A stretch of DNA of 64,000 nucleotides from Macrostomum lignano (GCA_002269645.1 NIVC01000867.1:62001-126000); one strand, 5' to 3'. Counted from the stretch's first letter, positions 1-45,644 are shown. Translations and numbers: made by a program. The notes: a model not told the origin generated them from the letters alone.

Positions 1-8
1 GAATTTGG

Positions 9-785
9 TTGACTGCATTCGATCAAAGGTGTGATCAGGAAGGAATAGATCAGGAGCACAGGAAAACTGAACTTCTAGCTAACCTAGATCTATCGACTGC
101 GTTTGCAGCAGTGCAGCGATTAAATTTACCCGAGGATTTGACGTATGAGGAATTTAAGGAGAGATTGGTGGAAAGATTTGGCCGGATTGGTAGCTCATCT
201 GAGTGCAGAGAAGAGTTTAGAGGTAGGATGCAGGGTAGAAACGAGGCAACCGACGTGTTCGCCGATGCTTTGATCGAACTAGCAGCTAGGGCGTTCCCAA
301 ATATGAACGCAGAACAGCGTGAAGAGGAAGTAATCGAGCAATTTATCAAGGGAGTAAGAATTTCCTCCGATACCCGGGAGAAACTCATTTTTGCTCAGCC
401 CACTAGCCTGCAGGAGGCCAGACGCATGCTTAGGAGAATAGAAGCAGCCTGGCATATGTCGCATAAGAACGGTGTCAGAGTCGTGAGAGACGAAGATGAT
501 GAGAAGAGCAAGTTAGAAAAGCTAATTAAGCAGCAGAAATCTGAGCTCGAAGAGCAGAAGAAGCTAATTCAGGAACTGCAAGCTGAAAAGCAGCAGCCGC
601 CAGTTACTCAGACTAGGCCGCAATACTATCAGCCAAGAGTTCAGGCGTTCCAGCCACAGCTTCGCCCGCTGATGCAGCAGCAGATAAGGAGGCAGATCCC
701 GTGGAAGCCAACACAGAATGTAGTGCGACCTGGCTTTAACAACCAGAGTCGATTCCCTGCCCGCAACCCCAATCAGGGAAACTAG
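9..785 (+). CDS. gag: Retrotransposon Gag, C-terminal part (frame open to the window edge)
   Basis: Retrotransposon capsid-like motif (FRGRMQGRNEATDVFADALIELAARAFP...EQFIKG), coiled coil, Q/P/R-rich tail; directly upstream of pol. Confidence 0.85.
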   Translation: MTAFDQRCDQEGIDQEHRKTELLANLDLSTAFAAVQRLNLPEDLTYEEFKERLVERFGRIGSSSECREEFRGRMQGRNEATDVFADALIELAARAFPNMNAEQREEEVIEQFIKGVRISSDTREKLIFAQPTSLQEARRMLRRIEAAWHMSHKNGVRVVRDEDDEKSKLEKLIKQQKSELEEQKKLIQELQAEKQQPPVTQTRPQYYQPRVQAFQPQLRPLMQQQIRRQIPWKPTQNVVRPGFNNQSRFPARNPNQGN

Positions 786-822: not shown

Positions 823-3800
823 GAAACCCCAAAGCGAAGCTCAGGCCTCTCATTTCTCCCGCAAACCCGTTTTCAACCCACTCCCTGGAGGATGGCGACA
901 AGTCCCATTTTCCAGGAATTCAATGCGTAATGCACCAATGCGTAATGCACCAACGCGTAATGCACCCATGTATAGAGCACCAATGCGTAATGCACCTGTA
1001 AACAGCGCGTCTCCCATCGCGCTATCTCCTAATATGTTTGAGTTATTGGCGTCAGAGCCCAGTGAGTCAGATGCAAAAGCATCAGCATCCGAGTTGACAA
1101 AGTCCCCAGTGACTAAGCCAGCAAATGCAAAGCAGAAGGCGAGAAAATCTCGCAAAGCGAAATATCGAGAAGCTAAGAAAGCAGCTGAGAAAGCAAAAGT
1201 TGAATTGATAAGCGAGAAAAGTAGCGAAGCAATTGTCTTTGGAGACGTTGAAGGTCAAGAAATTGACTTCTTGCTTGACACCGGAGCCGGAAACTGCTTC
1301 CTGAGCAAGTCAGTATGGTCCAAGGTGATCAAGACAGAGCAAATCAGAGAAACCAATAAGAGAGTTACCACATTTGATGGTTCCTCAGTGCAGCTAGAAG
1401 GAGAAGCTAGTGTGTCTGTAACCTTTGGAGATATTCAAATTAATATTAGCTTTTTGCTGTGCAGCTATGAATGTGATAACATTCTTGGCATGGACTTCTT
1501 CCTTTCTCACTGCAAAAGCATTGATTTAGATAATGGCATGCTTGTACTAAAGAGAGGCCTCTGTGTGCCTATGCAGTACACCCGCCAAGCAGTTAGAATT
1601 TGCCGAGTTTATACTCGAGAAAAGGCAGTAGTACCTGCTAATAGTGCATTGAGAGTTCCCATTAGGCTAGCGAAAGACCATGAGCTCAATCATGGCACTC
1701 CTATGACAGTAGAAGTGATCGGAGAAGGCGTGAGAGCCAAGGAATTGACAGTAGAGATGGTTCCGACATTGGTCACCATGAGAGACGGCAGTGCCATCGT
1801 GGAGATCGTGAATCGACACTCTGTCGACGTGAGACTGCCGAAGTCGACATTGATTGGTCTGGCCAAGCCCATGAGAGCCAAGGACCTCGTCTACTGGTCA
1901 GCATCGCCTTCCGCCGCCGAATCAGCTTCGCCGACAATTGCCGAAGATGCCGCACAACCCGCCGGACGTGTCTATCAAGCTCAGGCAACTGAAGATGCTT
2001 GGGTGAGCGAAATTAGTATTGGTGCCAATTTATCTGAAAGTCAGCGAAAAGCAGTAATTGATCTCGTGAGAGAGAATAGAGAAGCATTTTCCCAGCATGA
2101 TTTAGACATGGGATTGACTCATCTAGTCACTCATGAAATTTCCCTGAAGGACGAGACCCCTGTTAGAATCCCTACCCGCCGCATCCCCCCTCATCTCCAA
2201 AAGCAAGTCGACGCCCAGCTAGACGACATGCTAGCCAAGAATCTCATTCGCCCCTGCTATTCTACCTATTCTACCCCATTAGTCATTGTGCCAAAGAAGG
2301 ATGGCACCATCCGAATAGTGAGTGATTTCCGAGTGCTCAACTCTAGAGTTAACTATTTTCCCTATCCCCTCCCCAATATTCAAGAAACTTTTTCTAATCT
2401 TACTGGCAGTAGGTACTTTAGTAGTTTAGATCTTAACTCAGGTTATTGGCAAGTGCCTATAAAGGAAGAGCATAAGTTCATGACCGCGTTCTCTACTCTG
2501 ACGCGAGGACAGTTTGAGTACCAGGTTATGGCGCAAGGGTTATCCAACGCGCCCGGTACATTTCAAAGACTGATGAACTTAGTGCTAGCCGGAATCCAGC
2601 ATAAGTTTGCAATGTCGTATATTGACGATATAGTTACTTACTCGAAGCAATTTGAGGAGCATTTATCCCATCTAAGAGAGGTGTTTCAGAGATTGATCAC
2701 CGCAGGTTTAAAGTTGAGAGCGAAAAAGTGCAACTTATTTCACTCTGAACTCAAGTATCTAGGCCATGTGATAGGCAGAGATGGCATTCGCACAGACGAA
2801 GCCAAGATTGAAGCCATTAGGACCTGGCCAAAGCCAAAGGAAGTAAAGGAATTAAGAAGCTTTTTAGGATTGTGCAACTACTACAGCAGATTTGTCAAAA
2901 ATTATGCTGAAGTAGCGCATCCTCTTTTCCAGTTGACTCGTAAGGGAGTTCAAAACTTCCAAGCAAAATGGACAGCAAAGCATGATGAAGCGTTTGAGCT
3001 ATTGAAAACCCGTATGATGAGTACTGACGTGTTAGCATACCCTGAGTTCATAGATGATGAGAAGGTGAAGATGGTTCTCGATGTAGACGCCAGTGATGGA
3101 CGCATAGGTGCCTGTTTGGGACAAATCCAATCAGACGGTGTCGAGAGACCAATCGCCTACTTTAGTCGCGCTATGAAGGAGTCAGAAAAACGCTATCCCA
3201 TAACTCGCAAGGAGTTGCTAGCTCTAGTAGATGCCATGAGGCATTTCCGCTTCTATCTAATAGGAAAGAAATTTCTAGCTAGGACCGACCATAAGGCTAT
3301 ACTTTGGTTATTAAGGCAGACAGAAGCCCAGGGCATTTTAGGCAGATGGATTGAGCGCCTCAACGAGTTTCAATTTGAAATCGAGCATAGGAGTGGCGCG
3401 AAACATTCAAATGCCGATAGCTTGTCCCGAAGGCCAGCCGAGGCTGCCCAGCCAGATTGTAAAGCCAATGAGAAGGCGGAAGCCGAGAAGAAGAGTCGAG
3501 AGATAAGCAAAATCACCAGCAAAGGCGTAAGAGCCGAAGTGAACCAAGAGATAAGAACTGATAAAGAGGAGTTTATCCCCAGCGAACGCGTGTGTGCAAA
3601 GCAGAACCAGAATGGGAAGGCTAAGGACAGCATGAGCGATCTGACCCAGCCCCCCACTGAGCTGAGAGGAGAGACCAACCCCCCTGAGCCACAGAGGAAT
3701 AAAATAGTCTCTGGTGAGAAGAGTGTAAGGATTGACAGTGTGAAAACACAGAGCTCCTGCATTATGCAATCGAGCAGAGTCACCCCACAATCTGAGCACA

Positions 3801-4183
3801 GTGAGGAGTATGGCACGCTGAAGGTTGGAGCATTATTAGTTGACTTCCTACCCAACCCCCTGCGGAGAGAGCAGATCGTTAATGCCCAGCGAGAAGACCC
3901 CAATATTCGCACTTTGCTAAATTGCAAACTCGAAGAAAAGGAACCCCCCGCCGAGCAGAAGAGCATTAGCTCAGAATTAAGGCAGTTGAGCAAATTTTAC
4001 GAGAAAATGAAAATCGAAAGCGATATGCTTGTTATTGAAGAAGAAGGAGTAAGCAAAATTGTGTTGCCAGTGTCGCTGGACAAATTAGTGCTGGCTGATC
4101 TACACGATAGCCCACTAGCAGGACACTTGGGTCGTGACAAGACAGTGCAAAGAGTTAGGGAGAGTTTTGGAGACCTGGCTTAG
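782..4183 (+). CDS. pol: Pol: aspartic protease, reverse transcriptase, RNase H, start of integrase Zn finger
   Basis: FLLDTGA; TPLVIVPKKDG; DLNSGYWQ; YIDD; LDVDAS; ELLALV; RTDHKA; HSNADSLSR; LHDSPLAGHLG. The frame is open upstream of the listed ATG at 923. Confidence 0.95.
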   Translation, partial: LGFEGRYSRPRPSRKPQSEAQASHFSRKPVFNPLPGGWRQVPFSRNSMRNAPMRNAPTRNAPMYRAPMRNAPVNSASPIALSPNMFELLASEPSESDAKASASELTKSPVTKPANAKQKARKSRKAKYREAKKAAEKAKVELISEKSSEAIVFGDVEGQEIDFLLDTGAGNCFLSKSVWSKVIKTEQIRETNKRVTTFDGSSVQLEGEASVSVTFGDIQINISFLLCSYECDNILGMDFFLSHCKSIDLDNGMLVLKRGLCVPMQYTRQAVRICRVYTREKAVVPANSALRVPIRLAKDHELNHGTPMTVEVIGEGVRAKELTVEMVPTLVTMRDGSAIVEIVNRHSVDVRLPKSTLIGLAKPMRAKDLVYWSASPSAAESASPTIAEDAAQPAGRVYQAQATEDAWVSEISIGANLSESQRKAVIDLVRENREAFSQHDLDMGLTHLVTHEISLKDETPVRIPTRRIPPHLQKQVDAQLDDMLAKNLIRPCYSTYSTPLVIVPKKDGTIRIVSDFRVLNSRVNYFPYPLPNIQETFSNLTGSRYFSSLDLNSGYWQVPIKEEHKFMTAFSTLTRGQFEYQVMAQGLSNAPGTFQRLMNLVLAGIQHKFAMSYIDDIVTYSKQFEEHLSHLREVFQRLITAGLKLRAKKCNLFHSELKYLGHVIGRDGIRTDEAKIEAIRTWPKPKEVKELRSFLGLCNYYSRFVKNYAEVAHPLFQLTRKGVQNFQAKWTAKHDEAFELLKTRMMSTDVLAYPEFIDDEKVKMVLDVDASDGRIGACLGQIQSDGVERPIAYFSRAMKESEKRYPITRKELLALVDAMRHFRFYLIGKKFLARTDHKAILWLLRQTEAQGILGRWIERLNEFQFEIEHRSGAKHSNADSLSRRPAEAAQPDCKANEKAEAEKKSREISKITSKGVRAEVNQEIRTDKEEFIPSERVCAKQNQNGKAKDSMSDLTQPPTELRGETNPPEPQRNKIVSGEKSVRIDSVKTQSSCIMQSSRVTPQSEHSEEYGTLKVGALLVDFLPNPLRREQIVNAQREDPNIRTLLNCKLEEKEPPAEQKSISSELRQLSKFYEKMKIESDMLVIEEEGVSKIVLPVSLDKLVLADLHDSPLAGHLGRDKTVQRVRESFGDLA

Positions 4184-5574
4184 TGACAGCCATTGAGAAG
4201 TACATATCTGAGTGTATTCCGTGTTTGGAAAGCAAAAGAGGATGCCCTGTTCAGGCTCCAGTGCAGTCATTCCCAGTCAACGAGGCATTCCACCGCCTGC
4301 ATATTGATATCATAGGCCCCATTTCGAAAGAAAGCAAGAGAGGCCATAGATATGTGCTGACTGTAGTTGATAGCACTACCCGCTACCCATTCGCGTTCCC
4401 GATCCGTAATCAGAAGTCTGATACCGTGATCAAGATCTTACAGGAGCGAATTTTCAGCGAATATGGTCAATGCCATTGGATACATACTGACAATGGGAAA
4501 ACCTTCACAAGCAGACAGTTTAAAGCGTTTTGCGATTTGTACAATGTTAAACACACTTGTACCACCCCGTACCATGCCCAAAGTAATGGCTTGGTAGAGA
4601 GGTTTAACAAGCAAGTGAAATCCATCATTACCTGTTTAATTAAGAAGGACCATAGCAATTGGGATTTAATGATCCCAGCAGCGCTTGTTGCAGTGCGCAC
4701 TAGTGTGAATCAAACCACAGGCTATTCACCCCATTTCCTGTTATTCGGAAGGGAGCCAGTTTTGCCACTAGACAGTCAAATTCGCCAGCCAAAACAGTAC
4801 TCAGGCTATCCAGCCTATGTCGCAGATCATGCCGAAAGGCTAGAAATTGCCAGAAAAATCGTGAGAGATAAGCTCGAGAAAGTTGCTGATAATAGAAAGA
4901 ATATTGCTGAAACAGCCAAGCAGCCTAAGGAAGTACCAGTAGGGAGTTTAGCGCTAATAAATAACCCGCAGTTAGACAATGAGGAGTCTAACAAATTTCA
5001 CAGAAAGAAGAGAGCCGCCTATAGAGTGATTGAACAGATCTCAGATGTAGTGTTTAGAGTACAGAGAGAGGAAGATGGTGAGCTTGTAGGGAATAAATTA
5101 TTAGTGCATAGGGACAATTTAACACTAGTTCCTAATTCGACCGCGGAATTGCCAATTAAGGGAAGCCAGCAGGAGAGCCACCGGAAGAAAAATCAGTCAA
5201 GGAGGGAACCTAAAGCTAAGGGAAGCCACCCGCCGAGGAAGCATAAGGAGGTAGTGATTAGTGAAGAGTCTGAGTCTGACACTGAATCTGAAGATGAACG
5301 AGTGCAATGGCAATGCCAACTGAGAGAATCCGAAACGGAACCAGCAACTGAGAGCGAAGATGAGAGCCAAGAGTCAGAGAGTGCAGTAGAAGAAGAAGGA
5401 ATAATGAGCAATGCAGAAGACGCCAGAGAGAACAATGAGATTGAGCATGAGCACGAGGAAGCTAATTCAGAGAGGAGATACAATACACGCAGGCAGGTCA
5501 GGCCCCCCAAGTGCTATTGTTGCTTGAAGCGGCTGGCCACTGTGCTGTCTTTGTTGAACAATCTCAGTTTCTGA
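4183..5574 (+). CDS. Integrase (CC half of Zn finger, DDE core, acidic tail); continuation of pol across a 1-nt frameshift
   Basis: ECIPC, LHIDIIGP, HTDNG, NGLVERFN; adding one T to TTTT at 4165-4168 restores RVRESFWRPGLVTAIEKYISECIPC. Confidence 0.93.
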   Translation: MTAIEKYISECIPCLESKRGCPVQAPVQSFPVNEAFHRLHIDIIGPISKESKRGHRYVLTVVDSTTRYPFAFPIRNQKSDTVIKILQERIFSEYGQCHWIHTDNGKTFTSRQFKAFCDLYNVKHTCTTPYHAQSNGLVERFNKQVKSIITCLIKKDHSNWDLMIPAALVAVRTSVNQTTGYSPHFLLFGREPVLPLDSQIRQPKQYSGYPAYVADHAERLEIARKIVRDKLEKVADNRKNIAETAKQPKEVPVGSLALINNPQLDNEESNKFHRKKRAAYRVIEQISDVVFRVQREEDGELVGNKLLVHRDNLTLVPNSTAELPIKGSQQESHRKKNQSRREPKAKGSHPPRKHKEVVISEESESDTESEDERVQWQCQLRESETEPATESEDESQESESAVEEEGIMSNAEDARENNEIEHEHEEANSERRYNTRRQVRPPKCYCCLKRLATVLSLLNNLSF

Positions 5575-5612
5575 GTGGAGGAGAAGGAAGGAAGGAGAAG
5601 GAGGAGTGAGAG

Positions 5613-5844
5613 CCAATGAGAGGAGGCGTAGAAGTGAAGGGATTTCGAGGCCGTGGATAGGGGAGAGAGGCGAAGAGACCGACAGCCAATAAGGAAGAAT
5701 CATCAGCCAATGAGAGAAGACCTGCCATTTAAACAAATAATTGTTTGTTTGAATAAGCTTGAAACATGATACCCCCCAAAGTGGAATGTTTGTAAACCTA
5801 TATAAGCGAGATCCCTGACGCAATCAGTTCCTCATCCTCAACAG
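5613..5844 (+). promoter_or_regulatory. Candidate internal Pol II promoter and/or splice acceptor for ORF3
   Basis: CCAAT at 5613, 5686, 5707; TATATAA at 5799; Inr-like TCAGTT at 5824; pyrimidine tract plus CAG ending at 5844; ATG at 5900. Confidence 0.5.
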
Positions 5845-5899
5845 AGCAATAAGGCAGCAATTAAGTAGCAATAAAGAAGCAGTCAAGAGCAAATCCGTT

Positions 5900-7264
5900 A
5901 TGGATAAAGAAAACGAAGAGTTAAATATTTTAGCAGACGGTAGTGAATTTGACGATCTATTAAAAGAGCTTGAAGGGCCTTGGCCCATGCAGCAAGATGA
6001 GCAAACTGAGCAACCACAGCCAGAGCGTTCAGCGCAGCAAAACGAGCAAGAACAGCTAGCTGAGGCCCCGTCGCAGCCGCCTGCTACGCAGCAGCCTGCC
6101 CCGACGCTGGCACCGCCGTCAGAGCCATTACGGGAGCGTCAGCCAGCTGACCTGCCCGGGCCCTCGCAGCCACCGGAGCCCTCCACCAAGCCAAAGCGAC
6201 CTGCTGCGGAAACGGATCAGGGTACACAAGCAAAGAGGCCGGCCCCGTCAGGGCTGCCAGTGTCCCAGGATCCGGCAGCACGACAGGAGCTCGTTAGAGT
6301 AAAGTCGGTGCAGTCCGTGGTGGTAAAACCGACGGTTATGCAGAGGCACCCGGCTGGCGCGCGGCCCACACTGATGTTAGCTGCCCCGCCTCAGCAGCAG
6401 CGGCCGGCTCAGCGGTCGCAGCCTCGGCGTGTGGCGTCGCGAGCAGAAGTCCGACAGCAGCTGCCAGTGCACCGCAGGCTGGCTCCGCGGCCGCCGTCGC
6501 AGCAGCGCCAGCAGTCGCCGCCGCAGCGCCGCCACCAGTCTCCGCCGCGGCACCGTCAGCAGCCACCGCCGTCTCAGCACCGTCAGCAGCCACCGCCGTC
6601 TCAGCATCATCAGCAGCCACCGCCGTCTCAGCATCATCAGCAGCCACCGCCGTCTCAGCATCATCAGCAGCCACCGCCGTCTCAGCATCATCAGCAGCCA
6701 CCGCCGTCTCAGCATTATCAGCAGCCACCGCCGTCTCAGCATCATCAGCAGCCACCGCCGTCTCAGCATCATCAGCAGCCACCGCCGTCGCATCAGCAGC
6801 CGCCACCGCAGACTGCAGTGCCACCACAGGCGTCAACCTGCCGTGCAGCTGCAAGTTATTTGTTTGCCCCCGGCAACCAAGACATCCAAAGGCTTGCTGC
6901 GATGGGCGCCGACTTCAGCGCCATCATGGACGGTTTGTCGCCAGAACAGCAGGCAAGAATGAAGCGACTGATTGCTGCCCTGAAGGAATATCTAATGCGA
7001 ATCGGCCACTTGCGGTTGGACCGGCCGCTGCCACAGCGGGCCCAGGTCCGGCCAGCCTGCATTGTGCTTCGCCAAGAATTCACGCCTGAGCAAGCTGTCG
7101 CGGCTTGGCGCCGCGCCGTGAATTACGTACTTCATGACCTGAATGCGGCTGGCCAGCCGTACTTTCGCACGCTGCTTATCATCGAGATTAAGTGGCTCGC
7201 CGAGCAAGTCGGATGGCCTCTACGCGACCTTTTGCCGGACGAATTTAATCTGAATGATAATTAG
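5900..7264 (+). CDS. Accessory ORF3 of the Gypsy element, 454 aa: acidic N-terminus, P/Q-rich repeat, helical C-terminal domain; not env-like
   Basis: Intact ATG-TAG ORF, GC-rich against AT-rich flanks; frame-preserving 27-nt repeats (QHHQQPPPS); no signal peptide or TM segment visible. Confidence 0.8.
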   Translation: MDKENEELNILADGSEFDDLLKELEGPWPMQQDEQTEQPQPERSAQQNEQEQLAEAPSQPPATQQPAPTLAPPSEPLRERQPADLPGPSQPPEPSTKPKRPAAETDQGTQAKRPAPSGLPVSQDPAARQELVRVKSVQSVVVKPTVMQRHPAGARPTLMLAAPPQQQRPAQRSQPRRVASRAEVRQQLPVHRRLAPRPPSQQRQQSPPQRRHQSPPRHRQQPPPSQHRQQPPPSQHHQQPPPSQHHQQPPPSQHHQQPPPSQHHQQPPPSQHYQQPPPSQHHQQPPPSQHHQQPPPSHQQPPPQTAVPPQASTCRAAASYLFAPGNQDIQRLAAMGADFSAIMDGLSPEQQARMKRLIAALKEYLMRIGHLRLDRPLPQRAQVRPACIVLRQEFTPEQAVAAWRRAVNYVLHDLNAAGQPYFRTLLIIEIKWLAEQVGWPLRDLLPDEFNLNDN

Positions 7265-7617
7265 GTGACTATAATTGAACTGTCATGTACTGTTATTTTT
7301 TTCGCATTGCATGCATACCTATTTAGCCTTCACTAATTTTGCATGGATACCTATTTAGCCAAAATTTTTGTGTGCTCAACTTTGTGCAACTTTATATTTA
7401 GCCAAACATCTTTTTGTACGCTCAACTTCGTGCCATTTTAATAATAGCCAACCTTGCTCAATTCTTCCACTAACTATATTACTAATATTACCATGTTGTG
7501 TGCTGTTTTAATGTTTTAGTGTCAACCAATTTTATTTAGTGCCTACGTTTTGTGATTAAAAGCCCCCATTTGCACTTTAACTACACATTTATTCACTCAC
7601 TAGTTTATTCATAAATA

Positions 7618-8140
7618 TGTAGAAGGGAAGCCAGTTGAGGCAGGCCCAATATTTTTATACGTATACCATTTCGAATTTACGCCAAATTTCTTGGTTACGG
7701 AATTATTTTGTTATAGCGAAAAATAATTATTTTGTTTAAATTGATATTTTGTTTAACCACGTCCCGCGCACCCGTCCTCCCCCTCAGTAAACCTATAAAT
7801 ACAAGCGTTTTCGGGCTTTAAAAACTTCGCCCGCCGTTTCCTCGATTCGGTCAAGAAAAGCAAAACGTGTTGTCTTAGTCACTGGAAAGCAAGACAGGAG
7901 AAAAAGCTGTAAGAGGCCAGAAAAGCCGTAAGAGGCCAAGAAAGCTGTGAGAAGCCAGAAAAGCCGTAAGAGGCCAAGAAAAACTGTAAGAAGCCAGAAA
8001 AAGCCGTAAGAGGCCAGGAAAGCTGTGAGAAGCCAGAAATAGACGGTTGACGAGTCGGGCAACTCCTTCCCAGGGAGCCCGCAACTAAATATAAGGAATT
8101 AATAGTAGTAATAATAATAGTAGTGAGATTCATAATTACA
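7618..8140 (+). repeat. Candidate 3' LTR of the Gypsy element (limits uncertain)
   Basis: TGTA...TACA ends, TATAAA at 7794, short internal ~20-bp repeats (7900-8040), (TAA/TAG)-rich 3' end like the LTR at 11160-12346; no clean PPT precedes 7618. Confidence 0.45.
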
Positions 8141-8295
8141 TGTAGACCAGTGTTTGCCGCTCGACACTGCTACCAGGGCGCCTTGCATAGATTCAAGGAG
8201 TCCTTAGATTAGAATTCTAGACTTGATATTTTCTAAGAAGCAGCAATTGACTAAGCAATTTTATGGAGTAATAACTATCTTAATTTACAACAACT

Positions 8296-8363
8296 TGGTA
8301 ACAGCAGTGGGATTTTAGCAGACAGAAATATCCCCTGCGACAACTTGGTGACATCGGTAGGAT
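8296..8363 (+). other. Two tandem tRNA-Leu-type primer-binding-site-like sequences
   Basis: TGGTAACAGCAGTGGGAT (8296-8313) and TGGTGACATCGGTAGGAT (8346-8363), each preceded by ACAACT and resembling the tRNA-Leu PBS TGGTGGCAGCGGTGGGAT. Confidence 0.55.
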
Positions 8364-9350
8364 AGTCTACAATTTAGTTAAACACCCCCTGGTACATTAT
8401 TAAGTAGGAGCATCAATAAACAATTTTATTAGTAGTTGTTATCTACACTTTCTTTAGTCTGTGTAGGAACCATATAAAAAGCAATAGTCAAAAGGTAAAA
8501 AGGGCAATAGTCAAAAAGGTGATAGTCATAATAATTACAAGTTCATTACTTCAAATATATTATGCTTAGTTATAATTTGTGTTTGTCAAAATGTACATTT
8601 GTAAAAATGATTTTGGTAAAATATACAAGTTGTTATTGTCACAATGTTTATTTAAGATTTAAATAAGCATTTTAATACAAGTACTATTAATGCACTTAGT
8701 CTTAAGTATCAAAAATTAGAAAACCTTGATTTCCTTTTTAAAAAAAATTATGAGGCAGGTTTTTCCAAAAATATATTATGAAGATATCAAGTTTTTATTT
8801 GTATTGCAGCACAAAAATTGTTATTACTTTTGATATAAAACAAAGATTCAATGTTTATCTTTTGTTATATTCTGCTTTTCTTTTAGCTCTATTGATATTT
8901 ATAAAGCTTTTCAACAATATTCAGTTAAGAATCAAAATTCAAATATTCTTTATTGCTAGGGCCTACTTGTATATTTAAAAAAAATAATGAATTTACTCAT
9001 AAGTCTAGGTCTAGGTTTAACATATATATTTTAATTTGCTAGCAAACTTGTAATTCTAATAAATATATTGTGATTGTTAGTTTGTTGCTCTTTTGACTAT
9101 CACCATTTTGACTAAATTGCCATTTTAATCAATTGCCTTTTTGACCTATAGCTACCTATGCTATGGTCTATGTTTTGTCTTTAGTTCTATTGAAAATTAG
9201 AAATTCAACTATGAAAAGTTTTTTTATTTTCAACTGATAGCTAAGTCTAGTTCTTATTATTTAATATTAATACAAATTTTTAATCTTTATTCTTGATTAT
9301 AGGCCGAGTTTTATTTTGAGTTTTTTATTTTATAGATGTATTTCAAAGTA

Positions 9351-10960
9351 CGAGGGGTATTGCAAAAGTTTCCAGACTAGTGTTCGCTAAAGCACAATTC
9401 TTATCAGATTTGGATGAGCTTTCATCCATAAACTATTTGGTTATTTATAAGTGCCAGGCTAAAATTTTGCATGACTAGGACAAACACAGCCTACATTAGA
9501 GCCAAGTTAAGCCTGAGGGTCTATGTTATTTCACACAATTTCACTCGGAGAATGAGCTGACCAAAAAACCACTCAGATTTTGGTTTGAAAAAAAGTCAAT
9601 ATCATTTCATTAGCTTGTATGGCATGTCAACACATGGGTAAGACACCAATGCAGACTTTTAACAAAGTTTGTACTGCTTTTGGTGATCATGCAATGGGTT
9701 GCACACAAGTGTTTGCCCACCACCAACTTGCTGCTGATGGTCAAACAAGCATCGCTGATGCTGCTTGCTCTGGCCATCCACGTTCCAGCACAGATGACAA
9801 CAATGTGGCTGCTGTGCTCCAATATTTGGAGGTAAACCCATCTGCATATGTGTGTAAAGTGGAGAATGTGTGGTATTTACTACTCGTCTGTGAGTTGCAT
9901 TCTCCAACGCCACGGCTGGTCAAAGATTTGTACTAAGTAGGTGCCACGAGAGCTGACAGAAGAACACAAAAAGCACGGGTGCGATATTCGGCAGACAACT
10001 AGGCTGTATGGAATGAGCTTGGTGATGAGAAGTTCAAGCTAGGAGCTTGTAATAACAATGGACAAGATGCCGCTGCCAATGTTTAATCCACTGACAGTCA
10101 ATGCAGTAGTCAATGCAGTGGGGGCCAAAGGGACGGCACCCAGACACAAAGGTCATGAAGTTGGCCTGGACCCAGAACATCATGTGCACAGTATGGTTCA
10201 ATGCGCGAGGCGTGCTACTCGTTGACTACCCGCCACAGGGCCAGACAATCAATGCCAACTATGTGATTAACCAGCTAAAGCAAATGCATGCTGCCATTCT
10301 ATCCAAGCACCAAATCATGCGTCAGAAGCCATTCATCCTTTGGGACAATGTGCATCAGCATGCTGCTGCTCACACTTGCACCAAGGTGTAAGAGCTGGGC
10401 TTTTGTCAGCTAAGTCACCCAGCCTACAGCCCCAACCTTGCAATTGCCAACTTCCATCTCTTCGGTCCAATGAAGTTGCCAATGCGTTGGCAAGTTTTTA
10501 TGACACATCAGGTCATTGATGCCACTAATGCATTGCTGCACCAGCTGGACTCCAGCTTCTGGAAGGCTGGGTTTGACAATCTGATCGAATGCTATCAGAA
10601 GTATATAGTATTTAATGGTGAATATGTGTAGCACAATAGTGCTGGGCCAGACAGAAAGAATGACATCAGCTTTTACTGTGCCACATTTGACTATAAAACA
10701 ACTCATGCATGCAAAAAAATCGATAGCTATTGAGCAGAATGATAATTTTAACAATTAAGCTCATTTGATTTTCTTTAAGTCTATAACTGATCTCTCTCTA
10801 CTTAAATGCACATATCTTTTAAAATACAAATCTAAATCAATCACAGTTTAAGTCATTTTAAAGAAGAGACTTGCCATTTTCAAATGATAACAAATTTATA
10901 TCAATGCAGCTAATCAAATGTCTACAAGTAAAAGTAACACTACTTTCCAAACACCCCTCA
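9351..10960 (+). mobile_element. Decayed mariner (Tc1/mariner) DNA transposon
   Basis: TA|CGAGGGGTATTGCAAAAGT ... ACTTTCCAAACACCCCTCA|TA imperfect TIRs with TA flanks; transposase remnants (HTH, NIMCTVWFNARGVLLVDY, LWDNV, HPAYSPNLA) broken by stops and frameshifts. Confidence 0.9.
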
Positions 10961-11159
10961 TATTTCTGTTTTTATCAGTGTCTAACCTATATATTAAATA
11001 GGTCATTCTATATACTAAACTAAGGCTAAGCATAGTTGTATAATATATAACAAAAGAGGATTTACTAAGTGTATAATCTCATTTTTTCATTTTTCATCTT
11101 AGGGAGTACTCAGTATCCTTAACAGCAAGAAATAGATTAGATATTAATGGTGGTATTAA

Positions 11160-12346
11160 TGTTAATAATTATTAGTTACTATTATTATTAGTAATATTAT
11201 TACTATTATTGTTATTAATATTATTATTATTGGAGTATAGGTGTCTTGCCTGTTGTCTAGAGGCCTTCTATAGGAGCGCTGCCACCAATGAAGTGTTGTT
11301 ATTTCCTCGATAGCTTCTAGAGGTGTCCTAGCAGATCTTCTGGCTCCTGGTCGGTGACCTCGAGTTGGCGGTTTCTTAGAAAGTAGTTCTCGTAGCATAG
11401 GTAATGTTGCCACCAGCTTCGTAGAGTCGCAGCCTTCGGTGAGGTGCTGAGCTCGTAGAAGCAAATAACTAAGACGAGAGAAAGAGACTCGCACTTCGTG
11501 CAGATTTAGCAGTTCTCGCGCAGAGGTGCCCACTGTCAGCAGTCCCTGCCGGGCTGGTGCGGGGTGAGAGCAAAAGTGCTAGCTCCGGGCGATCCGAGCT
11601 GGCCTGCTAATTGATAGCAGGAACAATCAGAGGCAGTCACGCGCAAAGTCGGGAGTCTTGGAGTTTAAACTTTAGCACACGCGCTGATCGAAACGGCGGA
11701 GAGGTGAAATGAATACGGAAAAACGCGGAAACGCAGAAACGGAAGGCTGAAACGCGGAAAAGCTGAAACGCTTGTCTGAGCCAAGCCATGAGAGGGGCCG
11801 CATTTATAGGGAGAATCGATTGCACCATAGCACGAAAGACCCCCGCTGAGAGTCATGGGTGACTCTGTTGCTATTTTTAGCAACAAACAAGCGGGCCCTG
11901 CCTCAGAGGAGGCAAGGGGGTCCGGGCGCACGTGATCTCCCCATAAACACGAGCCCAGCGTACAATGATGAAATCATTGCACTTTGGACTAAAGAAGGAA
12001 GAAGGCCTTATCATGTGACTGGCTCACATGACAAGGGGAAAAGGCCCACAAGTGAAGGCACTCGTGACCGTGGGACCGGAAAACAGAATGGCACTCCAAA
12101 TTTGGAGATGCCAGAGAACGAAACAGAGGCAGGCCAGACCAAGCTGTCTTGGCACTGCAAAAAGGGAAAACGAAGCAAAAGGGGGCAAACGAGGACAAAC
12201 AGACAGACAGGCAAGCGGGCAGAGGACAGGCCAGAGGACAGGCGGGAAGGGACAGGCAACTGCCCAGCGGCAGACAGAAGCCCAGGGCGGGGGCGAGGGC
12301 AACAGCTGACTAGTGCGGCGCCTAACTAAACTAGCGACTCACTACA
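11160..12346 (-). mobile_element. LTR (~1.19 kb) of a second, inverted retroelement fragment
   Basis: On the minus strand PPT GGGGAGAG (12354-12347) abuts TGTAGT...; ends ...TTAACA at 11160; TATAAA at 11808-11803. Confidence 0.75.
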
Positions 12347-12696
12347 CTCTCCCCGTTCAAATAAAGAGGCGGAGTGAAGCGGCGCGCGCTTTATTTAAAA
12401 GAGAACAAATGCAAGTTTTAATGAAAATTAATGCGATGCAAAATGCTGCGGCTAGAGGATGACGGCGAAGGATGCATAATGCTGGCTGGGCGAAGGCCAT
12501 AAAAGATGAAGCCCGTACCGCGGGGGCGTTGGCCCGCTATTAAACGCCTAAATGTTGATGTGGGGCGCCAGTCCACTACAAAAGGGCGCTCAAGCACGCG
12601 TGGAGGCACCTGCATCCCTAACTGGGAGTGAGCTTTGGGTTGGCGAGAACACCTTAACCTGAATAAACCATGGTTAAAATGCAGCTTTTCCTCGTT

Positions 12697-13272
12697 TCAC
12701 AAATACCGCGTCGACGGCCGGGCCAGGGCCGCCGGCAGCTCTGCCTCGCTGCCGCCGAGATGCCGGGCGATCTCAGTCGCCGCCAGGTGTACAGCGAACG
12801 GGCGGTTCGGTTGCTGCAAGTCTGGACCGCCCAGACGAACGGCCTCTTCGAGTAGGGCCGAGCGTTCTTCCATTGTCGTCCAGCGCAGGCTGCTCCATAC
12901 CGGACCAGCGAACACCTGGGGCCAGTGGCCGTGTCGAGCCGCGTCGACCAGGAGGTTGCGCGCTAGGCAAGCGGCGGCGGTCAGCAGCGCCGCACGTCCC
13001 TCGTCGGCGGGTAGAGCTGGCCCTGGGGTGCTCGTCTGGGTGCCGACGTCAGCCCGTTGCGGTGGCTCCTCCGGCGTGGGCGGCGGAGCGCGAGGTAACT
13101 CGCCGCGCAGCGCTTCCGCCAGGCCTTCCCAGAGGCCTGCTGGCTCGGACGCCTCCTCGTGGCCGGCTCGCGGCGACGGGATGCCTTCGACCAGCGACAT
13201 CGGCGACCCTGGCTGGTCATAGTGGGACCCGGGCTGCGGGAAGTCCCTTGGGCCTATGTCTTGAGTTTTCAC
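12697..13272 (-). CDS. Accessory ORF of the second LTR element; putative homologue of ORF3 (true start uncertain)
   Basis: GC-rich ORF just upstream of PPT+LTR; Pro-rich N-terminus; C-terminal 36-aa block aligns ungapped with ORF3 (11 identities). Confidence 0.65.
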   Translation of the reverse strand: MKTQDIGPRDFPQPGSHYDQPGSPMSLVEGIPSPRAGHEEASEPAGLWEGLAEALRGELPRAPPPTPEEPPQRADVGTQTSTPGPALPADEGRAALLTAAACLARNLLVDAARHGHWPQVFAGPVWSSLRWTTMEERSALLEEAVRLGGPDLQQPNRPFAVHLAATEIARHLGGSEAELPAALARPSTRYL

Positions 13273-15151: not shown

Positions 15152-18100
15152 GCACCTGTTTGAACATTAGCGGAGCTGGTCTGCAGTCGGCCGTGAACTT
15201 GCACGGCCCGCCCATTGTTGTAAGCTGGTTGTATTTAATGTATGTATTAATTTAATAATATGTGTGCAGAAGGATTGTGATCGGATAGGATCTCTTGTTT
15301 GATGGACTTCAAAGTTCCCCTCACAAAAGCTTGGAAACTGGATAAACTCGTTCTTTTCCACTGCTGTACCCCCCTCACATCCATTGAATTAAAGGCTCAA
15401 GTAATGTTTTAGGTCTTTCAAGTCTCAGTTATTGAACAACCTTTAATATTACTAGATATTTAAATTGGGAAATATGAATTTCGTAACCATAATAGTATTA
15501 ATTAATTACACCTGCCCTAATGGGCAGATGTGCAACCGACAGCTCAGCCGCAGCTATTTGCGCGGCGCATCTGAAGGCTGCGTACGGCTGTTCAGTCCAA
15601 GGACTGGGGGGTCGCCACACACAGCCTCAATTACCCCAGCTAATGCTGGCACCCATTTTTACAGCTGGGTGAACTGAAGCAATGCAGAGTTAAGTGTCTT
15701 GCTCAAGGACACAAATTGTTCCAGTTGGAATCGGGAATCGAACCCCCGACCTTTTCAGTCATGAGTGCGACCGTCTTACCACTAGGCTGCAACCCCCACT
15801 GTAGCGTGACCATACCTATGTCTGTGTCTTATGTCTAAAAACCACCGTATCTTGTGTCAGACACAGCGTGTACAGCAACCCTGACTTTCTAATCGTTAGG
15901 CATGTGATGGATTATATCTATACACAGTTTTACCAATATCGATTGCAGAAAGAAGTCAATAATTTGATGTCGAAGTTTGCTGATTCGCCCGGTGGGATGA
16001 AGATCGGTAAGCGATGACTTAGTAGCTCTTCAGGACTGATTTATATTGTCTTAATGTCTCTCTTTGTACTTTCTTTTCTTTTAAGAGTACAACGCGTCCT
16101 CGGACTTTGCCGATCCTGTATTTCAAGTCGCCAGCTTGAGCGCCAGGTGCACCGCTTGTGAGTGTTTTTGCTTTGATGGAGAAATTCTTTGTGAAATTAA
16201 AAAAAAAGTTTTTTATATTCACTTATCATACTACTTGATTTCAGCTACTGCTCAATCTTATTGCTATCTGTTTAAGGTAATTGTTTTTTTATATAATAAT
16301 TTTGTTCAACTTTGCTATATGATATAACTATTTTAATTTTTGTTAATCTAAATATTTTAGCCAAATCCTTTGCCTGCTAAGCTGGACATGCTCAAGGCAG
16401 TTCAGATGAACTTTCCTGTGTGAGTTAGGTTTAAAATTGTTTTAATATACTTTCTTTCTCAGTAGATGTGTAGGTCCCCAGTTGCTGGGCCAGCCTCCCA
16501 GAGTGTCAGTTGCTGGGCCAGCCTCTCAGGTCCTCAGTTGCTGGGCCAGCCTCCCAGATCCTCAGTTGCTGGGCCAGCCTCCCAGAGCCTCAGTTGCTGG
16601 GCCAGCCTCCCAGAGTGTCAGTTGCTGGGCCAGCCTCTCAGGTCCTCAGTTGCTGAGCCAGCCTCCCAGAGTGTCAGTTGCTGGGCCAGCCTCTCAGGTC
16701 CTCAGTTGCTGAGCCAGCCTCCCAGAGTGTCAGTTGCTGGGCCAGCCTCCCAGAGCCTCAGTTGCTGGGCCAGCCTCCCAGATCCTCAGTTGCTGGGCCA
16801 GCCTCCCAGATCCTCAGTTGCTGGGCCAGCCTCCCAGAGTGTCAGTTGCTGGGCCAGCCTCCCAGATCCTCAGTTGCTGGGCCAGCCTCCCAGATCTTCA
16901 GTTGCTGGGCCAGCCTCCCAGATCCTCAGTTGCTAAGCCAGCCTCTCAGATCCTCAGTTGCTGGGCCAGCCTCCCAGATCCTCAGTTGCTGGGCCAGCCT
17001 CCCAGAGTGTCAGTTGCTGGGCCAGCCTCTCAGATCCTCAGTTGCTGGGTCAGCCTCCCAGATCCTCAGTTGCTGGGCCAGCCTCTTAGATCCTCAGTTG
17101 CTGGGCCAGCCTCCCAGATCCTCAGTTGCTGAGCCAGCCTCCCAGAGTGTCAGTTGCTGGGCCAGCCTCCCAGAGTGTCAGTTGCTAAGCCAGCCTCTCA
17201 GATCCTAAGTTGCTGGGCCAGCCTCCCAGATCCTCAGTTGCTGGGCCAGCCTCCCAGATCTTCAGTTGCTGGGCCAGCCTCCCAGATCCTCAGTTGCTGG
17301 GCCAGCCTCTCAGATCCTCAGTTGCTGGGCCAGCCTCTTAGATCCTCAGTTGCTGGGCCAGCCTCTCAGATCCTCAGTTGCTGGGTCAGCCTCTCAGATC
17401 CTCAGTTGCTGGGCCAGCCTCTTAGATCCCCAGTTGCTGGGCCAGCCTCCCAGATCCTCAGTTGCTGAGCCAGCCTCCCAGAGTGTCAGTTGCTGGGCCA
17501 GCCTCCCAGATCCTCAGTTGCTGGGCCAGCCTCCCAGATCCTCAGTTGCTGAGCCAGCCTCCCAGAGTGTCAGTTGCTGGGCCAGCCTCCCAGATCCTCA
17601 GTTGCTGGGCCAGCCTCCCAGATCCTCAGTTGCTGGGCCAGCCTCCCAGATCTTCAGTTGCTGGGCCAGCCTCCCAGATCCTCAGTTGCTGGGCCAGCCT
17701 CTCAGATCCTCAGTTGCTGGGCCAGCCTCTCAGGTCCTCAGTTGCTAAGCCAGCCTCTCAGATCCTCAGTTGCTGGGCCAGCCTCTTAGATCCTCAGTTG
17801 CTGGGCCAGCCTCCCAGATCCTCAGTTGCTGGGTCAGCCTCCCAGATCCTCAGTTGCTGGGCCAGCCTCCCAGATCCTCAGTTGCTGGGCCAGCCTCTCA
17901 GATCCTCAGTTGCTGGGTCAGCCTCCCAGATCCTCAGTTGCTGGGCCAGCCTCTTACTAGTAGATCCTCAGTTGCTGGGCCAGCCTCCCAGATCCTCAGT
18001 TGCTGAGCCAGCCTCCCAGAGTGTCAGTTGCTGGGCCAGCCTCCCAGATCCCCAGTTGCTGGGCCAGCCTCCCAGATCCTCAGTTGCTGGGCCAGCCTCT

Positions 18101-45300: not shown

Positions 45301-45644
45301 AGCCTAGGTTCGAGTTTATCATGCTGAAATATCTGACCTCCCAGATTATTGGCATATCATTCTCTCTGTGGGTGTGGAGTAATAAGACTATGAAGGCTTG
45401 GTACCGCCTGCTGCAGTGCCGCTTGTCGCCGCCAAGGCAGACAGCTAATAGTAACAATGGCGCGACTGTTGCTAACGGAGTCAGTCAGCCTGTTGTAGAT
45501 CCAGTTCCGGATTTCCGGCATCCTATGCTGGCTCCTCAGGCTCAGAGTCTGCTTCAGCAGCAGCAACAGCAATTGCAACAGCATCCGAATAATGCTTCCC
45601 GGCTAGCTTATTTCAGCAATGAAGAGCAGAGGATCATTATTTGA
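39314..45644 (+). CDS. FZD: Frizzled-family Wnt receptor (subfamily not assigned)
   Basis: Exons 39314-39712, 42368-43091, 44791-45644, phase-consistent; signal peptide, Cys-rich CRD (CTDLPYNRTNFPNILGH...PCRSLC...FGWAENLRC), 7TM with YPERP and YFHFLAW, KTxxxW motif (KTMKAW). Confidence 0.96.
39909..40097. mobile_element. hAT-type MITE (189 bp)
   Basis: TIRs CAGTGGCGCAACCAG / CTGGTTGCGCTACTG; perfect 8-bp TSD CATAGGAA. Confidence 0.92.
40651..41289. mobile_element. Foldback-like mariner-derived non-autonomous element
   Basis: ~195-bp imperfect inverted arms (40651-40845 / 41097-41289), TA on the left; core encodes a mariner HTH remnant (EIHKNLTRIHGPNAISQQMVYRWIEQF). Confidence 0.8.
41450..41809 (-). 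mobile_element. tRNA-derived SINE, family B
   Basis: Minus-strand head GGGGCCGTAGCCCAGCGG (A box) and GGCTCGATTCC (B box), A-rich tail, 13-bp TSD TGTTGAAAAAGTT (41437-41449, 41810-41822). Confidence 0.85.
43195..44750. repeat. 25-bp intronic minisatellite (GTAGAATCGCCCCTAGAATCCACCT)
   Basis: Fills Frizzled intron 2. Confidence 0.97.

What the first reader, a model, noticed from the sequence alone, without database searches (positions are those of the whole stretch)
7082..12876. Two different LTR retroelements share an apparently undescribed non-env accessory protein domain
ORF3 of the Gypsy element (codons 7082-7189, +) and the lone ORF of the inverted LTR fragment (codons 12876-12769, -) align without gaps over 36 aa: TPEQAVAAWRRAVNYVLHDLNAAGQPYFRTLLIIEI vs TMEERSALLEEAVRLGGPDLQQPNRPFAVHLAATEI. 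There are 11 identities, giving T-x-E-x3-A-x4-AV-x5-DL-x5-P[YF]-x3-L-x3-EI. Both ORFs are GC-rich, lie in the 3' part of their element just before the LTR-like end, and pair a disordered Pro-rich N-terminus with a ~100-aa helical C-terminus. Their LTR sequences are otherwise dissimilar, so protein-level conservation would imply selection. I recognise no env, chromodomain or known 3' ORF family here. A role such as anti-silencing factor, condensate scaffold or integration tether is pure inference.
Basis: partly seen in the sequence, partly recalled or inferred. Interest (0 to 1): 0.85.

Follow-up and report, generated by a model that had tools for sequence, protein, structure and literature searches.

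The report
Two unrelated extra genes in flatworm retrotransposons
Both reading frames are real, conserved, non-envelope genes lying just upstream of the end-repeats of two flatworm (Macrostomum) retrotransposons, but the 36-residue resemblance said to link them is no better than chance, so a shared domain is not shown.

Summary
The 36-aa alignment exists as written (11 identities), but it is not significant. BLASTP does not report it, and 49% of shuffles reach 11/36. Profile tests give p of about 0.05 to 0.35. No identity falls on a column conserved in both families.

Both ORFs are nevertheless real genes. The window is Macrostomum DNA, from M. lignano or a close relative.

ORF3 (5900-7264) belongs to a small family. 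The other members are four M. lignano "hypothetical proteins" and one protein from Logan contigs. A relative with 83% identical RT-RNase H and 69% identical integrase carries its homologue at the same place: after integrase, behind a conserved TATA box, and before the PPT and LTR. Very young M. lignano elements without pol also keep it. Its C-terminal ~115 aa form a confidently predicted helical bundle with no Pfam, PDB or BFVD match.

The minus ORF (12697-13272) has a 54% identical M. lignano counterpart with coding-type substitutions (dN/dS about 0.2). It lies about 660 bp upstream of a different LTR-like repeat.

Verdict: two lineage-specific accessory ORFs of a known kind, and homology between them is unproven. 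ORF3 diverges much faster than pol (33% against 83%), so remote homology cannot be excluded.

The parts
1..785 (+). gag of the Ty3/Gypsy element. Its 5' end and the 5' LTR lie outside the window.
   Evidence: The ORF runs off the left edge. Weak Retrotrans_gag hit. 80% aa identity to the gag that follows LTR and PBS in Logan contig L006.
923..5574 (+). pol (protease, RT, RNase H, integrase). Broken once by one frameshift, with no internal stops.
   Evidence: Pfam hits RVP/Asp_protease, RVT_1, RT_RNaseH, Integrase_H2C2 and rve. The relative L003 reads RT through integrase in one frame. RT-RNase H is 83% and integrase 69% aa identical to L003.
5575..5899 (+). Spacer between integrase and ORF3. 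It holds a purine-rich tract, three CCAAT motifs and a TATA box (TATATAA, 5799-5805) 101 nt before the ORF3 ATG. Putative internal promoter.
   Evidence: Read from the sequence. The same TATATAA(A)GCGA box lies 94 nt before the ATG of the homologue in L006, although the spacers are otherwise unalignable.
5900..7264 (+). ORF3, 454 aa, intact. It has an N-terminal acidic/hydrophobic motif, KRP basic motifs, a Pro/Gln-rich repeat region and a conserved C-terminal domain.
   Evidence: 423 open codons are reached by only 0.4% of dinucleotide shuffles. Homologues P0040-P0043, P0045 and P0046. N-terminal motif and KRP are conserved. No Pfam hit.
6556..6809 (+). 27-bp tandem repeat, 9.5 copies, encoding the PPPSQHHQQ repeats inside ORF3.
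   Evidence: TRF. Other family members have different low-complexity repeats at this place.
6917..7261 (+). Conserved C-terminal domain of ORF3 (residues ~340-454), a predicted helical bundle.
   Evidence: 14 invariant columns across the family. AlphaFold2 mean pLDDT 76 and pTM 0.68, with four main helices. No PDB or BFVD fold match: best E 0.7, TM about 0.3. No PDB sequence match.
7082..7189 (+). They span a helix, a loop and the start of the next helix.
7621..7635 (+). Polypurine tract and junction (AGAAGGGAAGCCAGT) directly before the 3' LTR.
   Evidence: Conserved with L006 and with the 3' LTR junction of the complete M. lignano element in L002.
7636..8342 (+). 3' LTR of the Gypsy element (TG...ACA). 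It has a TATA box at 7794-7800 and 38-bp repeats at 7903-8039.
   Evidence: Both boundaries were fixed by conserved blocks shared with L006 and L002. TRF.
8346..8357 (+). PBS-like sequence TGGTGACATCGG just after the 3' LTR. This is unexpected behind a 3' LTR.
   Evidence: It matches the PBS TGGTGGCAGCG that follows the LTR in L002, L001, L005 and L006.
12697..13272 (-). Minus-strand ORF, 191 aa from GTG and 167 aa from the first ATG at 13200. A TATA-like box lies 124 nt before that ATG.
   Evidence: No Pfam or PDB hit. No protein-database hit.
12745..12906 (-). Part of the minus ORF (residues 123-176) conserved with M. lignano locus L002:14-175.
   Evidence: tblastn gives 54% aa identity with E = 1e-14. 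Differences by codon position are 21/13/31. dN/dS is about 0.22 in this frame, against 0.74 and 1.8 in the other two frames.
12034..12696 (-). Spacer between the minus ORF and the LTR-like repeat. Block 12113-12405 is 93% identical to M. lignano L002.
11254..12033 (-). LTR-like repeat of the second element (TGTCATG...CTAGACA). It has a TATA box at 11808-11802 and the 11-mer TGGTGGCAGCG at 11287-11277 near its end.
   Evidence: 88% identical to L005:16523-17277, and parts are 93-97% identical to L002. No second copy and no pol or gag elsewhere in the window.

Best explanation
The window is Macrostomum DNA, from M. lignano or a close relative.

The plus-strand element is a Ty3/Gypsy LTR retrotransposon. 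Its third gene, ORF3, is a genuine lineage-specific accessory gene. It sits between integrase and the polypurine tract and 3' LTR. It has its own conserved TATA box about 100 nt upstream. It encodes a short N-terminal acidic/hydrophobic motif, KRP basic motifs, a fast-changing Pro/Gln-rich disordered repeat region, and a conserved C-terminal helical bundle of about 115 aa with no known relatives.

The minus-strand ORF is a different conserved coding sequence. It lies upstream of the LTR-like repeat of a second, fragmentary element.

The two proteins have the same position and the same general build, but no demonstrable sequence homology. The 36-aa match is a chance alignment of two Ala/Leu/Arg/Glu-rich helical segments.

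Shown: the existence, conservation and position of both ORFs, and the predicted fold of the ORF3 domain.

Inferred:
- ORF3 is made from a subgenomic transcript. This starts either at the internal TATA promoter or, alternatively, at a splice acceptor just upstream of the ATG.
- ORF3 acts in trans as a nuclear or RNA-handling or host-interaction factor for the element, in the way CERV acts for Cer1. This would also explain why pol-less derivative elements keep it.
For: Organism. Window repeats are 88-97% identical to M. lignano assembly GCA_002269645.1.

ORF3 family.
- An exhaustive phmmer search of 1.84 billion representatives found P0040-P0043 at E = 8e-10 to 1.5e-7, each matching at its C-terminus.
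- These are M. lignano hypothetical proteins and Logan contig proteins.

Position.
- L003 carries pol (83% identical RT-RNase H, 69% identical integrase) followed by the ORF3 homologue.
- L006 reads integrase end, TATA, ORF3 homologue, PPT, LTR, PBS, gag.
- In L001 and L002 the homologue lies inside a complete element of about 5.9 kb without pol, whose LTRs are 99.9-100% identical.
- The TATA box is conserved at -101 and -94.

Structure. pLDDT 76 and pTM 0.68, with no fold match.

Minus ORF. 54% aa identity to L002, with dN/dS about 0.22 only in the ORF's own frame.

No homology between the two..

Non-env. No TM segment: maximum Kyte-Doolittle 19-mer 0.68 and 1.47. No Pfam hit.
Against:
- 4 of 14 ORF3-family invariant columns are matched in that ungapped register, where about 1.2 are expected.
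- Both ORFs share position, a TATA box at about -100 to -125, overall architecture, and an LTR carrying the same 11-mer PBS motif.
- ORF3 diverges so fast (33% identity where RT-RNase H is 83%) that true homologues from a more distant element would be undetectable.
- The minus family has only two sequences, one of them cut by the locus end. Its structure model is unusable (pLDDT 48).
- No full-length copy shows the minus ORF next to pol, so its membership of a retroelement is inferred from the adjacent LTR-like repeat only.
- Expression of either ORF was not tested.
Confidence: 0.65

Rival explanations
1. The two ORFs are true but very remote homologues. On this view they are positional orthologues of one fast-evolving accessory-gene superfamily carried by different Macrostomum Ty3/Gypsy lineages, and the 36-aa match is its last visible trace.
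For: - Both lie in the same place relative to the LTR.
- Both have a TATA box about 100-125 nt upstream.
- Both have a Pro-rich N-terminal part and a helical C-terminal part.
- The PBS 11-mer TGGTGGCAGCG is associated with both LTR types.
- hhalign on the C-terminal domains finds the same register at P = 0.068.
- Helix-loop-helix boundaries roughly coincide in the two models.
- ORF3 C-terminal identity is already down to 33% between elements whose RT-RNase H is 83% identical.
Against: - No test reaches significance.
- The strongest motifs of each family have no counterpart in the other. These are Y-L-x-R-I, LPQR, LL-x2-E-x2-W and the GWP tail in ORF3, and QPNRP[FY]A and EEA[VI] in the minus family.
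- Zero of the 11 identities fall on columns conserved in both families.
- The secondary-structure match rests on a pLDDT-48 model.
Confidence: 0.2
2. The minus ORF is not a retroelement gene. It would be a host gene or exon, or a gene of another repeat type, that merely lies next to an LTR-like repeat.
For: - No pol, gag or second LTR copy occurs nearby in the window.
- L005 has the LTR-like repeat without the ORF.
- Divergence against L002 is mosaic: the ORF is about 65% identical in nucleotides while downstream blocks are 93-97% identical. This suggests the parts have separate histories.
- The island has CpG o/e of 1.07, like a promoter island.
Against: - In L002 the ORF homologue and the same downstream repeat are again adjacent, in the same order and orientation.
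- The arrangement (ORF, spacer, then a TG...CA repeat with TATA and a PBS motif) copies that of ORF3 and of P0040.
- No host-type domain was found.
Confidence: 0.2
3. One or both ORFs are non-coding open frames produced by GC-rich, stop-poor sequence.
For: Three frames are open for at least 193 codons in the minus island, and 7% of shuffles match the ORF length. Several overlapping ORFs on both strands cover the ORF3 repeat region.
Against: - ORF3 has homologues with 14 invariant residues and a confident fold model.
- The full ORF3 length is reached by only 0.4% of shuffles.
- The minus ORF shows a frame-specific excess of third-position changes and dN/dS of about 0.22.
Confidence: 0.04

Closest known systems
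M. lignano hypothetical proteins BOX15_Mlig016073g1/008906g2 (PAA77797.1, PAA83213.1), Mlig026206g1/g2 (PAA60020.1, PAA76031.1) and Mlig008543g1 (PAA73844.1), plus the Logan proteins P0041/P0045
   Same: They are true homologues of ORF3. They share the C-terminal domain at 33-40% identity with 14 invariant residues. The longer members (P0040, P0045) also share the N-terminal motif and the KRP motif with ORF3. Where the context is visible, they occupy the same position in front of an LTR.
   Different: They are annotated only as hypothetical, and nothing in the held papers links them to retroelements. Their central low-complexity regions differ in length and repeat type. Some lie in elements without pol.
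CERV of Cer1, a C. elegans Ty3/Gypsy element (PMC10309623)
   Same: [quoted passage not shown] It is restricted to one genus and diverges rapidly. It has helical domains and a candidate NLS. It acts in trans on the element's own RNA, being required for nuclear export of genomic RNA. It is the best functional model for ORF3.
   Different: CERV is 517 aa and is made from a spliced five-exon mRNA that shares exons with gag. ORF3 is a single ORF behind its own TATA box. The exhaustive search with the ORF3 domain returned only Macrostomum and Logan relatives plus two spurious repeat-protein hits (P0039, P0044), and no CERV-like protein. The function of ORF3 is untested.
Additional ORF3s of bdelloid rotifer LTR retrotransposons (PMC5408684)
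   Same: They are extra ORFs downstream of pol in animal LTR elements.
   Different: The rotifer ORF3s have recognisable domains (env-like fusion protein, GDSL esterase, DEDDy exonuclease) and clear homology between elements. Here there is no known domain, and sharing between the two elements is not demonstrable.
Additional ORFs of plant Ty3/Gypsy elements such as the Retand lineage (PMC11963269)
   Same: [quoted passage not shown]
   Different: They belong to plant lineages, and no sequence relationship was found. The Macrostomum ORF3 is compact and has a conserved folded domain.
Envelope genes of errantiviruses and other env-carrying Ty3/Gypsy elements (PMC13524379)
   Same: They occupy the same position in the element, after integrase and before the 3' LTR.
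   Different: Neither ORF has a signal peptide or TM-like hydrophobic segment. Neither has an env or fusion-protein Pfam hit. The ORF3 domain has no BFVD or PDB fold match.

Membership tests
Ty3/Gypsy (Metaviridae) LTR retrotransposon: plus-strand element | pol domain order protease, RT, RNase H, integrase | tested here: met
   Pfam hits in that order along 923-5574.
Ty3/Gypsy (Metaviridae) LTR retrotransposon: plus-strand element | Two LTRs (TG...CA), with a PBS after the 5' LTR and a PPT before the 3' LTR | tested here: inconclusive
   The PPT and the 3' LTR (7621-8342) were identified by conserved blocks shared with L006 and L002. The 5' LTR and PBS lie outside the window.
Macrostomum ORF3 family (defined here): ORF3 | C-terminal domain carrying the 14 invariant residues (Y-L-x-R-I, R, LPQR, L, LL-x2-E-x2-W) | tested here: met
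   phmmer E = 8e-10 to 1.5e-7 to four family members. Alignments A2 and A4.
Macrostomum ORF3 family (defined here): minus-strand ORF | A significant match to the family profile, with the invariant residues present | tested here: not met
   HMM score -0.9 bits, matched by 8% of shuffles. hhalign probability 0.55-0.8%. 4 of 14 invariant columns matched in the claimed register. 0 of 11 identities lie on columns conserved in both families.
Retroviral / errantiviral env | Signal peptide, transmembrane anchor, and a fusion-glycoprotein domain | tested here: not met
   Maximum 19-aa hydropathy is 0.68 for ORF3 and 1.47 for the minus ORF, both below the TM range. No Pfam hit. No viral fold match for the ORF3 domain.
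Chromodomain (chromovirus integrase tail) or another known 3' domain | A Pfam chromo hit or another known domain hit | tested here: not met
   No Pfam family at E <= 0.1 for either ORF.
CERV (Cer1) family | Sequence similarity to CERV, and a spliced mRNA sharing gag exons | tested here: inconclusive
   The exhaustive phmmer search with the ORF3 domain found no nematode protein. No direct comparison was run and the transcript structure is unknown. The resemblance is functional and positional only.
LTR retroelement: minus-strand fragment | The ORF physically linked to gag/pol and flanked by two copies of the same LTR | tested here: not met
   No pol or gag, and no second LTR copy, in the window. 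Only an LTR-like repeat (TG...CA, TATA, PBS 11-mer) lies downstream, and it recurs in L002 and L005. Full-length copies could not be fetched with these tools.

The most novel reading that the evidence does not exclude
ORF3 and the minus ORF are diverged members of one rapidly evolving accessory-gene superfamily that Macrostomum Ty3/Gypsy lineages carry in front of the 3' LTR. On this reading the gene is expressed from its own internal promoter and is kept even by pol-less non-autonomous derivatives. That makes it a Rev/CERV-like trans-acting factor, or a counter-silencing factor, in an arms race with the host.
Probability: 0.2. Interest if true: 0.55.

Novelty: new member of a known kind. Interest (0 to 1): 0.3.

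Why it matters
[quoted passage not shown] CERV of Cer1 is the rare worked example.

The finding as stated, a domain shared by two elements, does not hold. The follow-up nevertheless defines a small, previously unlabelled protein family in a laboratory model flatworm.
- Its C-terminal domain has a confidently predicted helical fold with no known relative.
- It has its own conserved promoter element.
- It evolves much faster than gag or pol.
- Very young non-autonomous elements retain it.

This gives TE biologists working on M. lignano a concrete candidate accessory factor. It also explains several 'hypothetical proteins' in that genome's annotation as retroelement genes. The interest is that of a useful annotation, not of a new kind of system.

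Tried and rejected
1. Word-indexed protein searches with the ORF3 C-terminus and with the minus ORF found nothing. Only the exhaustive search found the ORF3 family.
2. Exact look-ups of both ORFs in the contig index were not on record.
3. The integrase search gave only distant relatives, at most 43% identity, in fish and molluscs, so no close family copy was found by that route.
4. A search for other copies of either ORF, of pol, or of the LTRs inside the window found none.
5. I first read the purine-rich tract directly after the integrase stop, with the CCAAT/TATA/AATAAA signals that follow, as the PPT and a short 3' LTR. That would have put ORF3 outside the element. I rejected it because L003 and L006 place the ORF3 homologue inside the element, and the real PPT/LTR junction is conserved at 7621-7636.
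6. I considered that the minus ORF lies inside a 2-kb LTR starting at a purine tract near 13300. This is neither supported nor excluded. The L005 copy begins at about 12040.
7. AlphaFold2 on the minus ORF alone gave pLDDT 48, so no fold comparison was possible.
8. Scans of metagenome contigs (minus family) and viral contigs (ORF3 family) gave no relatives.
9. tRNA and Rfam scans found nothing, so the primer tRNA for the PBS could not be named.
10. The held papers on Macrostomum LTR elements do not mention an ORF3. The SRA runs behind the Logan contigs could not be identified.
11. The Gypsy clade (Mag, Gmr1/Osvaldo and so on) was not assigned, because no reference sequences were available from the tools.

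Full report
**1. The observation**

The two quoted peptides are in the sequence at the stated codons. They align without gaps with 11 identities and a BLOSUM62 sum of 28. They lie in ORF 5900-7264 (+), 454 aa, and ORF 12697-13272 (-), 191 aa.

The match is not more than chance.
- BLASTP of the two proteins does not list it. The best hit has E = 0.6 and lies in Pro-rich sequence.
- Some 36-aa window with 11 identities is found in 49% of shuffles. If only the C-terminal parts are compared, the window score has p about 0.03 and the best HSP p about 0.27.

**2. Where the window comes from**

Several repeats in the window are 88-97% identical to loci of the Macrostomum lignano assembly GCA_002269645.1. 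All database homologues of ORF3 are M. lignano proteins or come from Logan contigs of one SRA series. The window is therefore Macrostomum DNA, from M. lignano or a close relative.

It also holds a Frizzled gene, a short-chain dehydrogenase exon, a mariner fragment, and more than twenty different minisatellite arrays.

**3. The plus-strand element**

Pfam shows protease, RT, RNase H and integrase along 923-5574, with a weak gag hit in 9-785. The 5' LTR is off the window. pol is broken once by a frameshift. The related Logan contig L003 reads RT through integrase in one frame.

ORF3 follows integrase after a 325-bp spacer.

**4. ORF3 is a real, conserved gene of this lineage**

The word-indexed search found nothing. 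The exhaustive phmmer search with the C-terminal 154 aa found four true homologues (P0040-P0043, E = 8e-10 to 1.5e-7), each matching at its own C-terminus. It also returned two spurious repeat proteins.

Alignment shows 14 invariant residues. ORF3, P0040 and P0045 also share an N-terminal acidic/hydrophobic motif and KRP motifs. The central region is low-complexity and differs between members. In the window it is a 27-bp repeat present in 9.5 copies.

Context settles the position of the gene.
- L003 carries pol (83% aa identity in RT-RNase H, 69% in integrase) followed by the homologue.
- L006 reads integrase end, TATA, ORF3 homologue, PPT, LTR, PBS, then gag, which is 80% identical to the window's gag.
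- In M. lignano loci L001 and L002 the homologue P0040 lies in a complete element of about 5.9 kb. The order is LTR, PBS, a gag-like ORF, the ORF3-like gene, PPT, LTR, with no pol. The LTRs are 99.9-100% identical, so the insertions are very young.

Conserved blocks fix the window's PPT at 7621-7635 and its 3' LTR at 7636-8342.

A TATATAA(A)GCGA box lies 101 nt before the ATG in the window and 94 nt before it in L006, although the spacers are otherwise unalignable. This suggests an internal promoter. A pyrimidine-rich tract ending in AG just upstream of the ATG leaves a spliced mRNA as an alternative.

**5. What ORF3 looks like**

With the family alignment, AlphaFold2 gives the C-terminal 134 aa a mean pLDDT of 76 and pTM of 0.68. 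The model is a bundle of four main helices.
- Foldseek finds nothing significant in the PDB (best E 0.74, TM 0.29) or in BFVD (best E 0.72).
- The PDB sequence search finds nothing.
- Pfam finds nothing.
- There is no TM-like segment.

So ORF3 is not env, not a chromodomain, and not any described domain.

ORF3 evolves much faster than the rest of the element. Between the window and the Logan relative, RT-RNase H is 83% identical, gag 80% and integrase 69%. The ORF3 C-terminal domain is 33% identical, and the N-terminal two thirds cannot be aligned.

**6. The minus-strand ORF**

Its length alone proves nothing. The 66% GC island has three frames open for at least 193 codons, and 7% of dinucleotide shuffles reach that length.

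However, tblastn found a 54% identical stretch (residues 123-176, E = 1e-14) at the edge of M. lignano locus L002, ending at a stop in nearly the same place. Differences by codon position are 21/13/31. dN/dS is about 0.22 in the ORF's frame, against 0.74 and 1.8 in the other two frames. It is therefore coding sequence under constraint.

Downstream lies an LTR-like repeat at 12033-11254. It runs TG...CA, has a TATA box at 11808-11802, and carries the 11-mer TGGTGGCAGCG that serves as the PBS in the other Macrostomum elements. It is 88% identical to L005, and parts are 93-97% identical to L002.

There is no pol, gag or second LTR copy in the window. L005 has the repeat without the ORF. The reading 'ORF of an LTR-element fragment' is therefore plausible but rests on adjacency seen twice (window and L002).

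Divergence against L002 is mosaic. The ORF is about 65% identical in nucleotides, while the downstream blocks are 93-97% identical. I cannot explain this beyond recombination between subfamilies.

**7. Are the two ORFs homologous?**

With real relatives in hand, the test is sharper.
- hhalign of the two family alignments gives 0.55% probability, and aligns only Pro-rich segments.
- An HMM of the ORF3 domain scores the minus ORF at -0.9 bits, and 8% of shuffles do as well.
P is 0.068, and 5% of column shuffles reach the score.
- My own profile-profile Smith-Waterman is matched by 35% of shuffles and picks another register.
- Column by column, none of the 11 identities lies where both families are conserved. 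The two identities on invariant ORF3 columns (L, E) are W and R in the M. lignano member of the minus family. The minus family's conserved QPNRP[FY]A and EEA[VI] motifs face variable ORF3 columns.
- In the ungapped register, 4 of 14 invariant ORF3 columns are matched, where about 1.2 are expected. Two of those four were part of the selected alignment.

No test survives correction for the several tests run, so homology is not shown. It is not excluded either, given the speed at which ORF3 diverges, the shared position and promoter spacing, and the shared architecture. I put it at about 0.2.

**8. Mechanism**

Shown:
- ORF3 is an intact, conserved, non-membrane protein gene inside the element.
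- It has a conserved TATA box.
- Young pol-less derivative elements retain it.

Inferred:
- It is expressed as a subgenomic mRNA.
- It works in trans for the element. Possible roles are nuclear or RNA-handling (the KRP motifs could be an NLS and the N-terminal Leu-rich acidic motif an export or interaction motif) or host interaction, which would fit its fast evolution.

The closest worked example is CERV of Cer1. [quoted passage not shown] There is no sequence link, and CERV is made from a spliced mRNA.

In that case the domains are recognisable and the homology is clear (PMC5408684).

The held papers on M. lignano LTR elements do not describe an ORF3 (PMC12801592).

**9. Verdict**

The alignment exists but is a chance match. 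The 'shared domain' is not supported.

What is really there is two lineage-specific accessory ORFs. One of them, ORF3, defines a small undescribed protein family of Macrostomum Ty3/Gypsy elements with a new-looking helical domain.

This is a new member of a known kind, namely extra ORFs of LTR retrotransposons. Interest is 0.3.

Noticed in passing
window 8346-8357; also L001 ~12425: The 3' LTR of the Gypsy element is followed directly by a PBS-like sequence, TGGTGACATCGG, as if a second element began there. No gag follows. The 3' LTR in M. lignano locus L001 is likewise followed by the PBS. This may reflect tandem elements sharing an LTR with later truncation, but it remains unexplained.
   Followed up: partly
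L001 6393-12436 and L002 6477-12390 (M. lignano): A complete non-autonomous LTR element of about 5.9 kb: LTR, PBS, a gag-like ORF with a partial zinc knuckle, the ORF3-like gene P0040, PPT, LTR, and no pol. Its LTRs are 99.9-100% identical and its internal regions are about 100% identical between the two loci, so the insertions are very recent.
   Followed up: partly
window 5900-7264 compared with L003/L006: ORF3 diverges far faster than the rest of the element. RT-RNase H is 83% identical, gag 80% and integrase 69%, but the ORF3 C-terminal domain is 33% identical and its N-terminal two thirds cannot be aligned.
   Followed up: partly
window 11228-12906 (-) compared with L002 1-1283: Similarity to the M. 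lignano copy is mosaic. The ORF and the 300 bp after it are about 65-70% identical, and then blocks of 93-97% identity follow. L002 lacks the stretch 11522-12112, which contains the TATA box, and about 100 bp around the PBS 11-mer.
   Followed up: partly
window 14372-59702: More than twenty different minisatellite arrays with periods of 12-99 bp, many 0.5-2 kb long. Examples are a 28-bp array at 16475-18584 and 21-bp arrays at 48684-49953 and 53082-53854. The 21-bp arrays also occur in M. lignano locus L004, inside a called gene with a weak cystatin hit.
   Followed up: no
window 39314-45644 (+): Exons of a Frizzled receptor gene: the Fz cysteine-rich domain at 39314-39826 and 7TM parts at 42479-43228 and 44757-45644. 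The gap between the last two exons is filled by a 25-bp tandem array at 43187-44751.
   Followed up: no
window 31000-31584 (-): An ORF with a short-chain dehydrogenase/reductase domain (adh_short), probably a host gene exon lying between two tandem arrays.
   Followed up: no
window 9619-10754: A degraded mariner-type transposase fragment (Pfam Transposase_1 at 10113-10391) between the two LTR-element pieces.
   Followed up: no
window 15489-15795 and 47523-47823: Two copies of a repeat of about 300 bp that are 88-90% identical to M. lignano L001:16279-16582. The repeat type is unknown.
   Followed up: no
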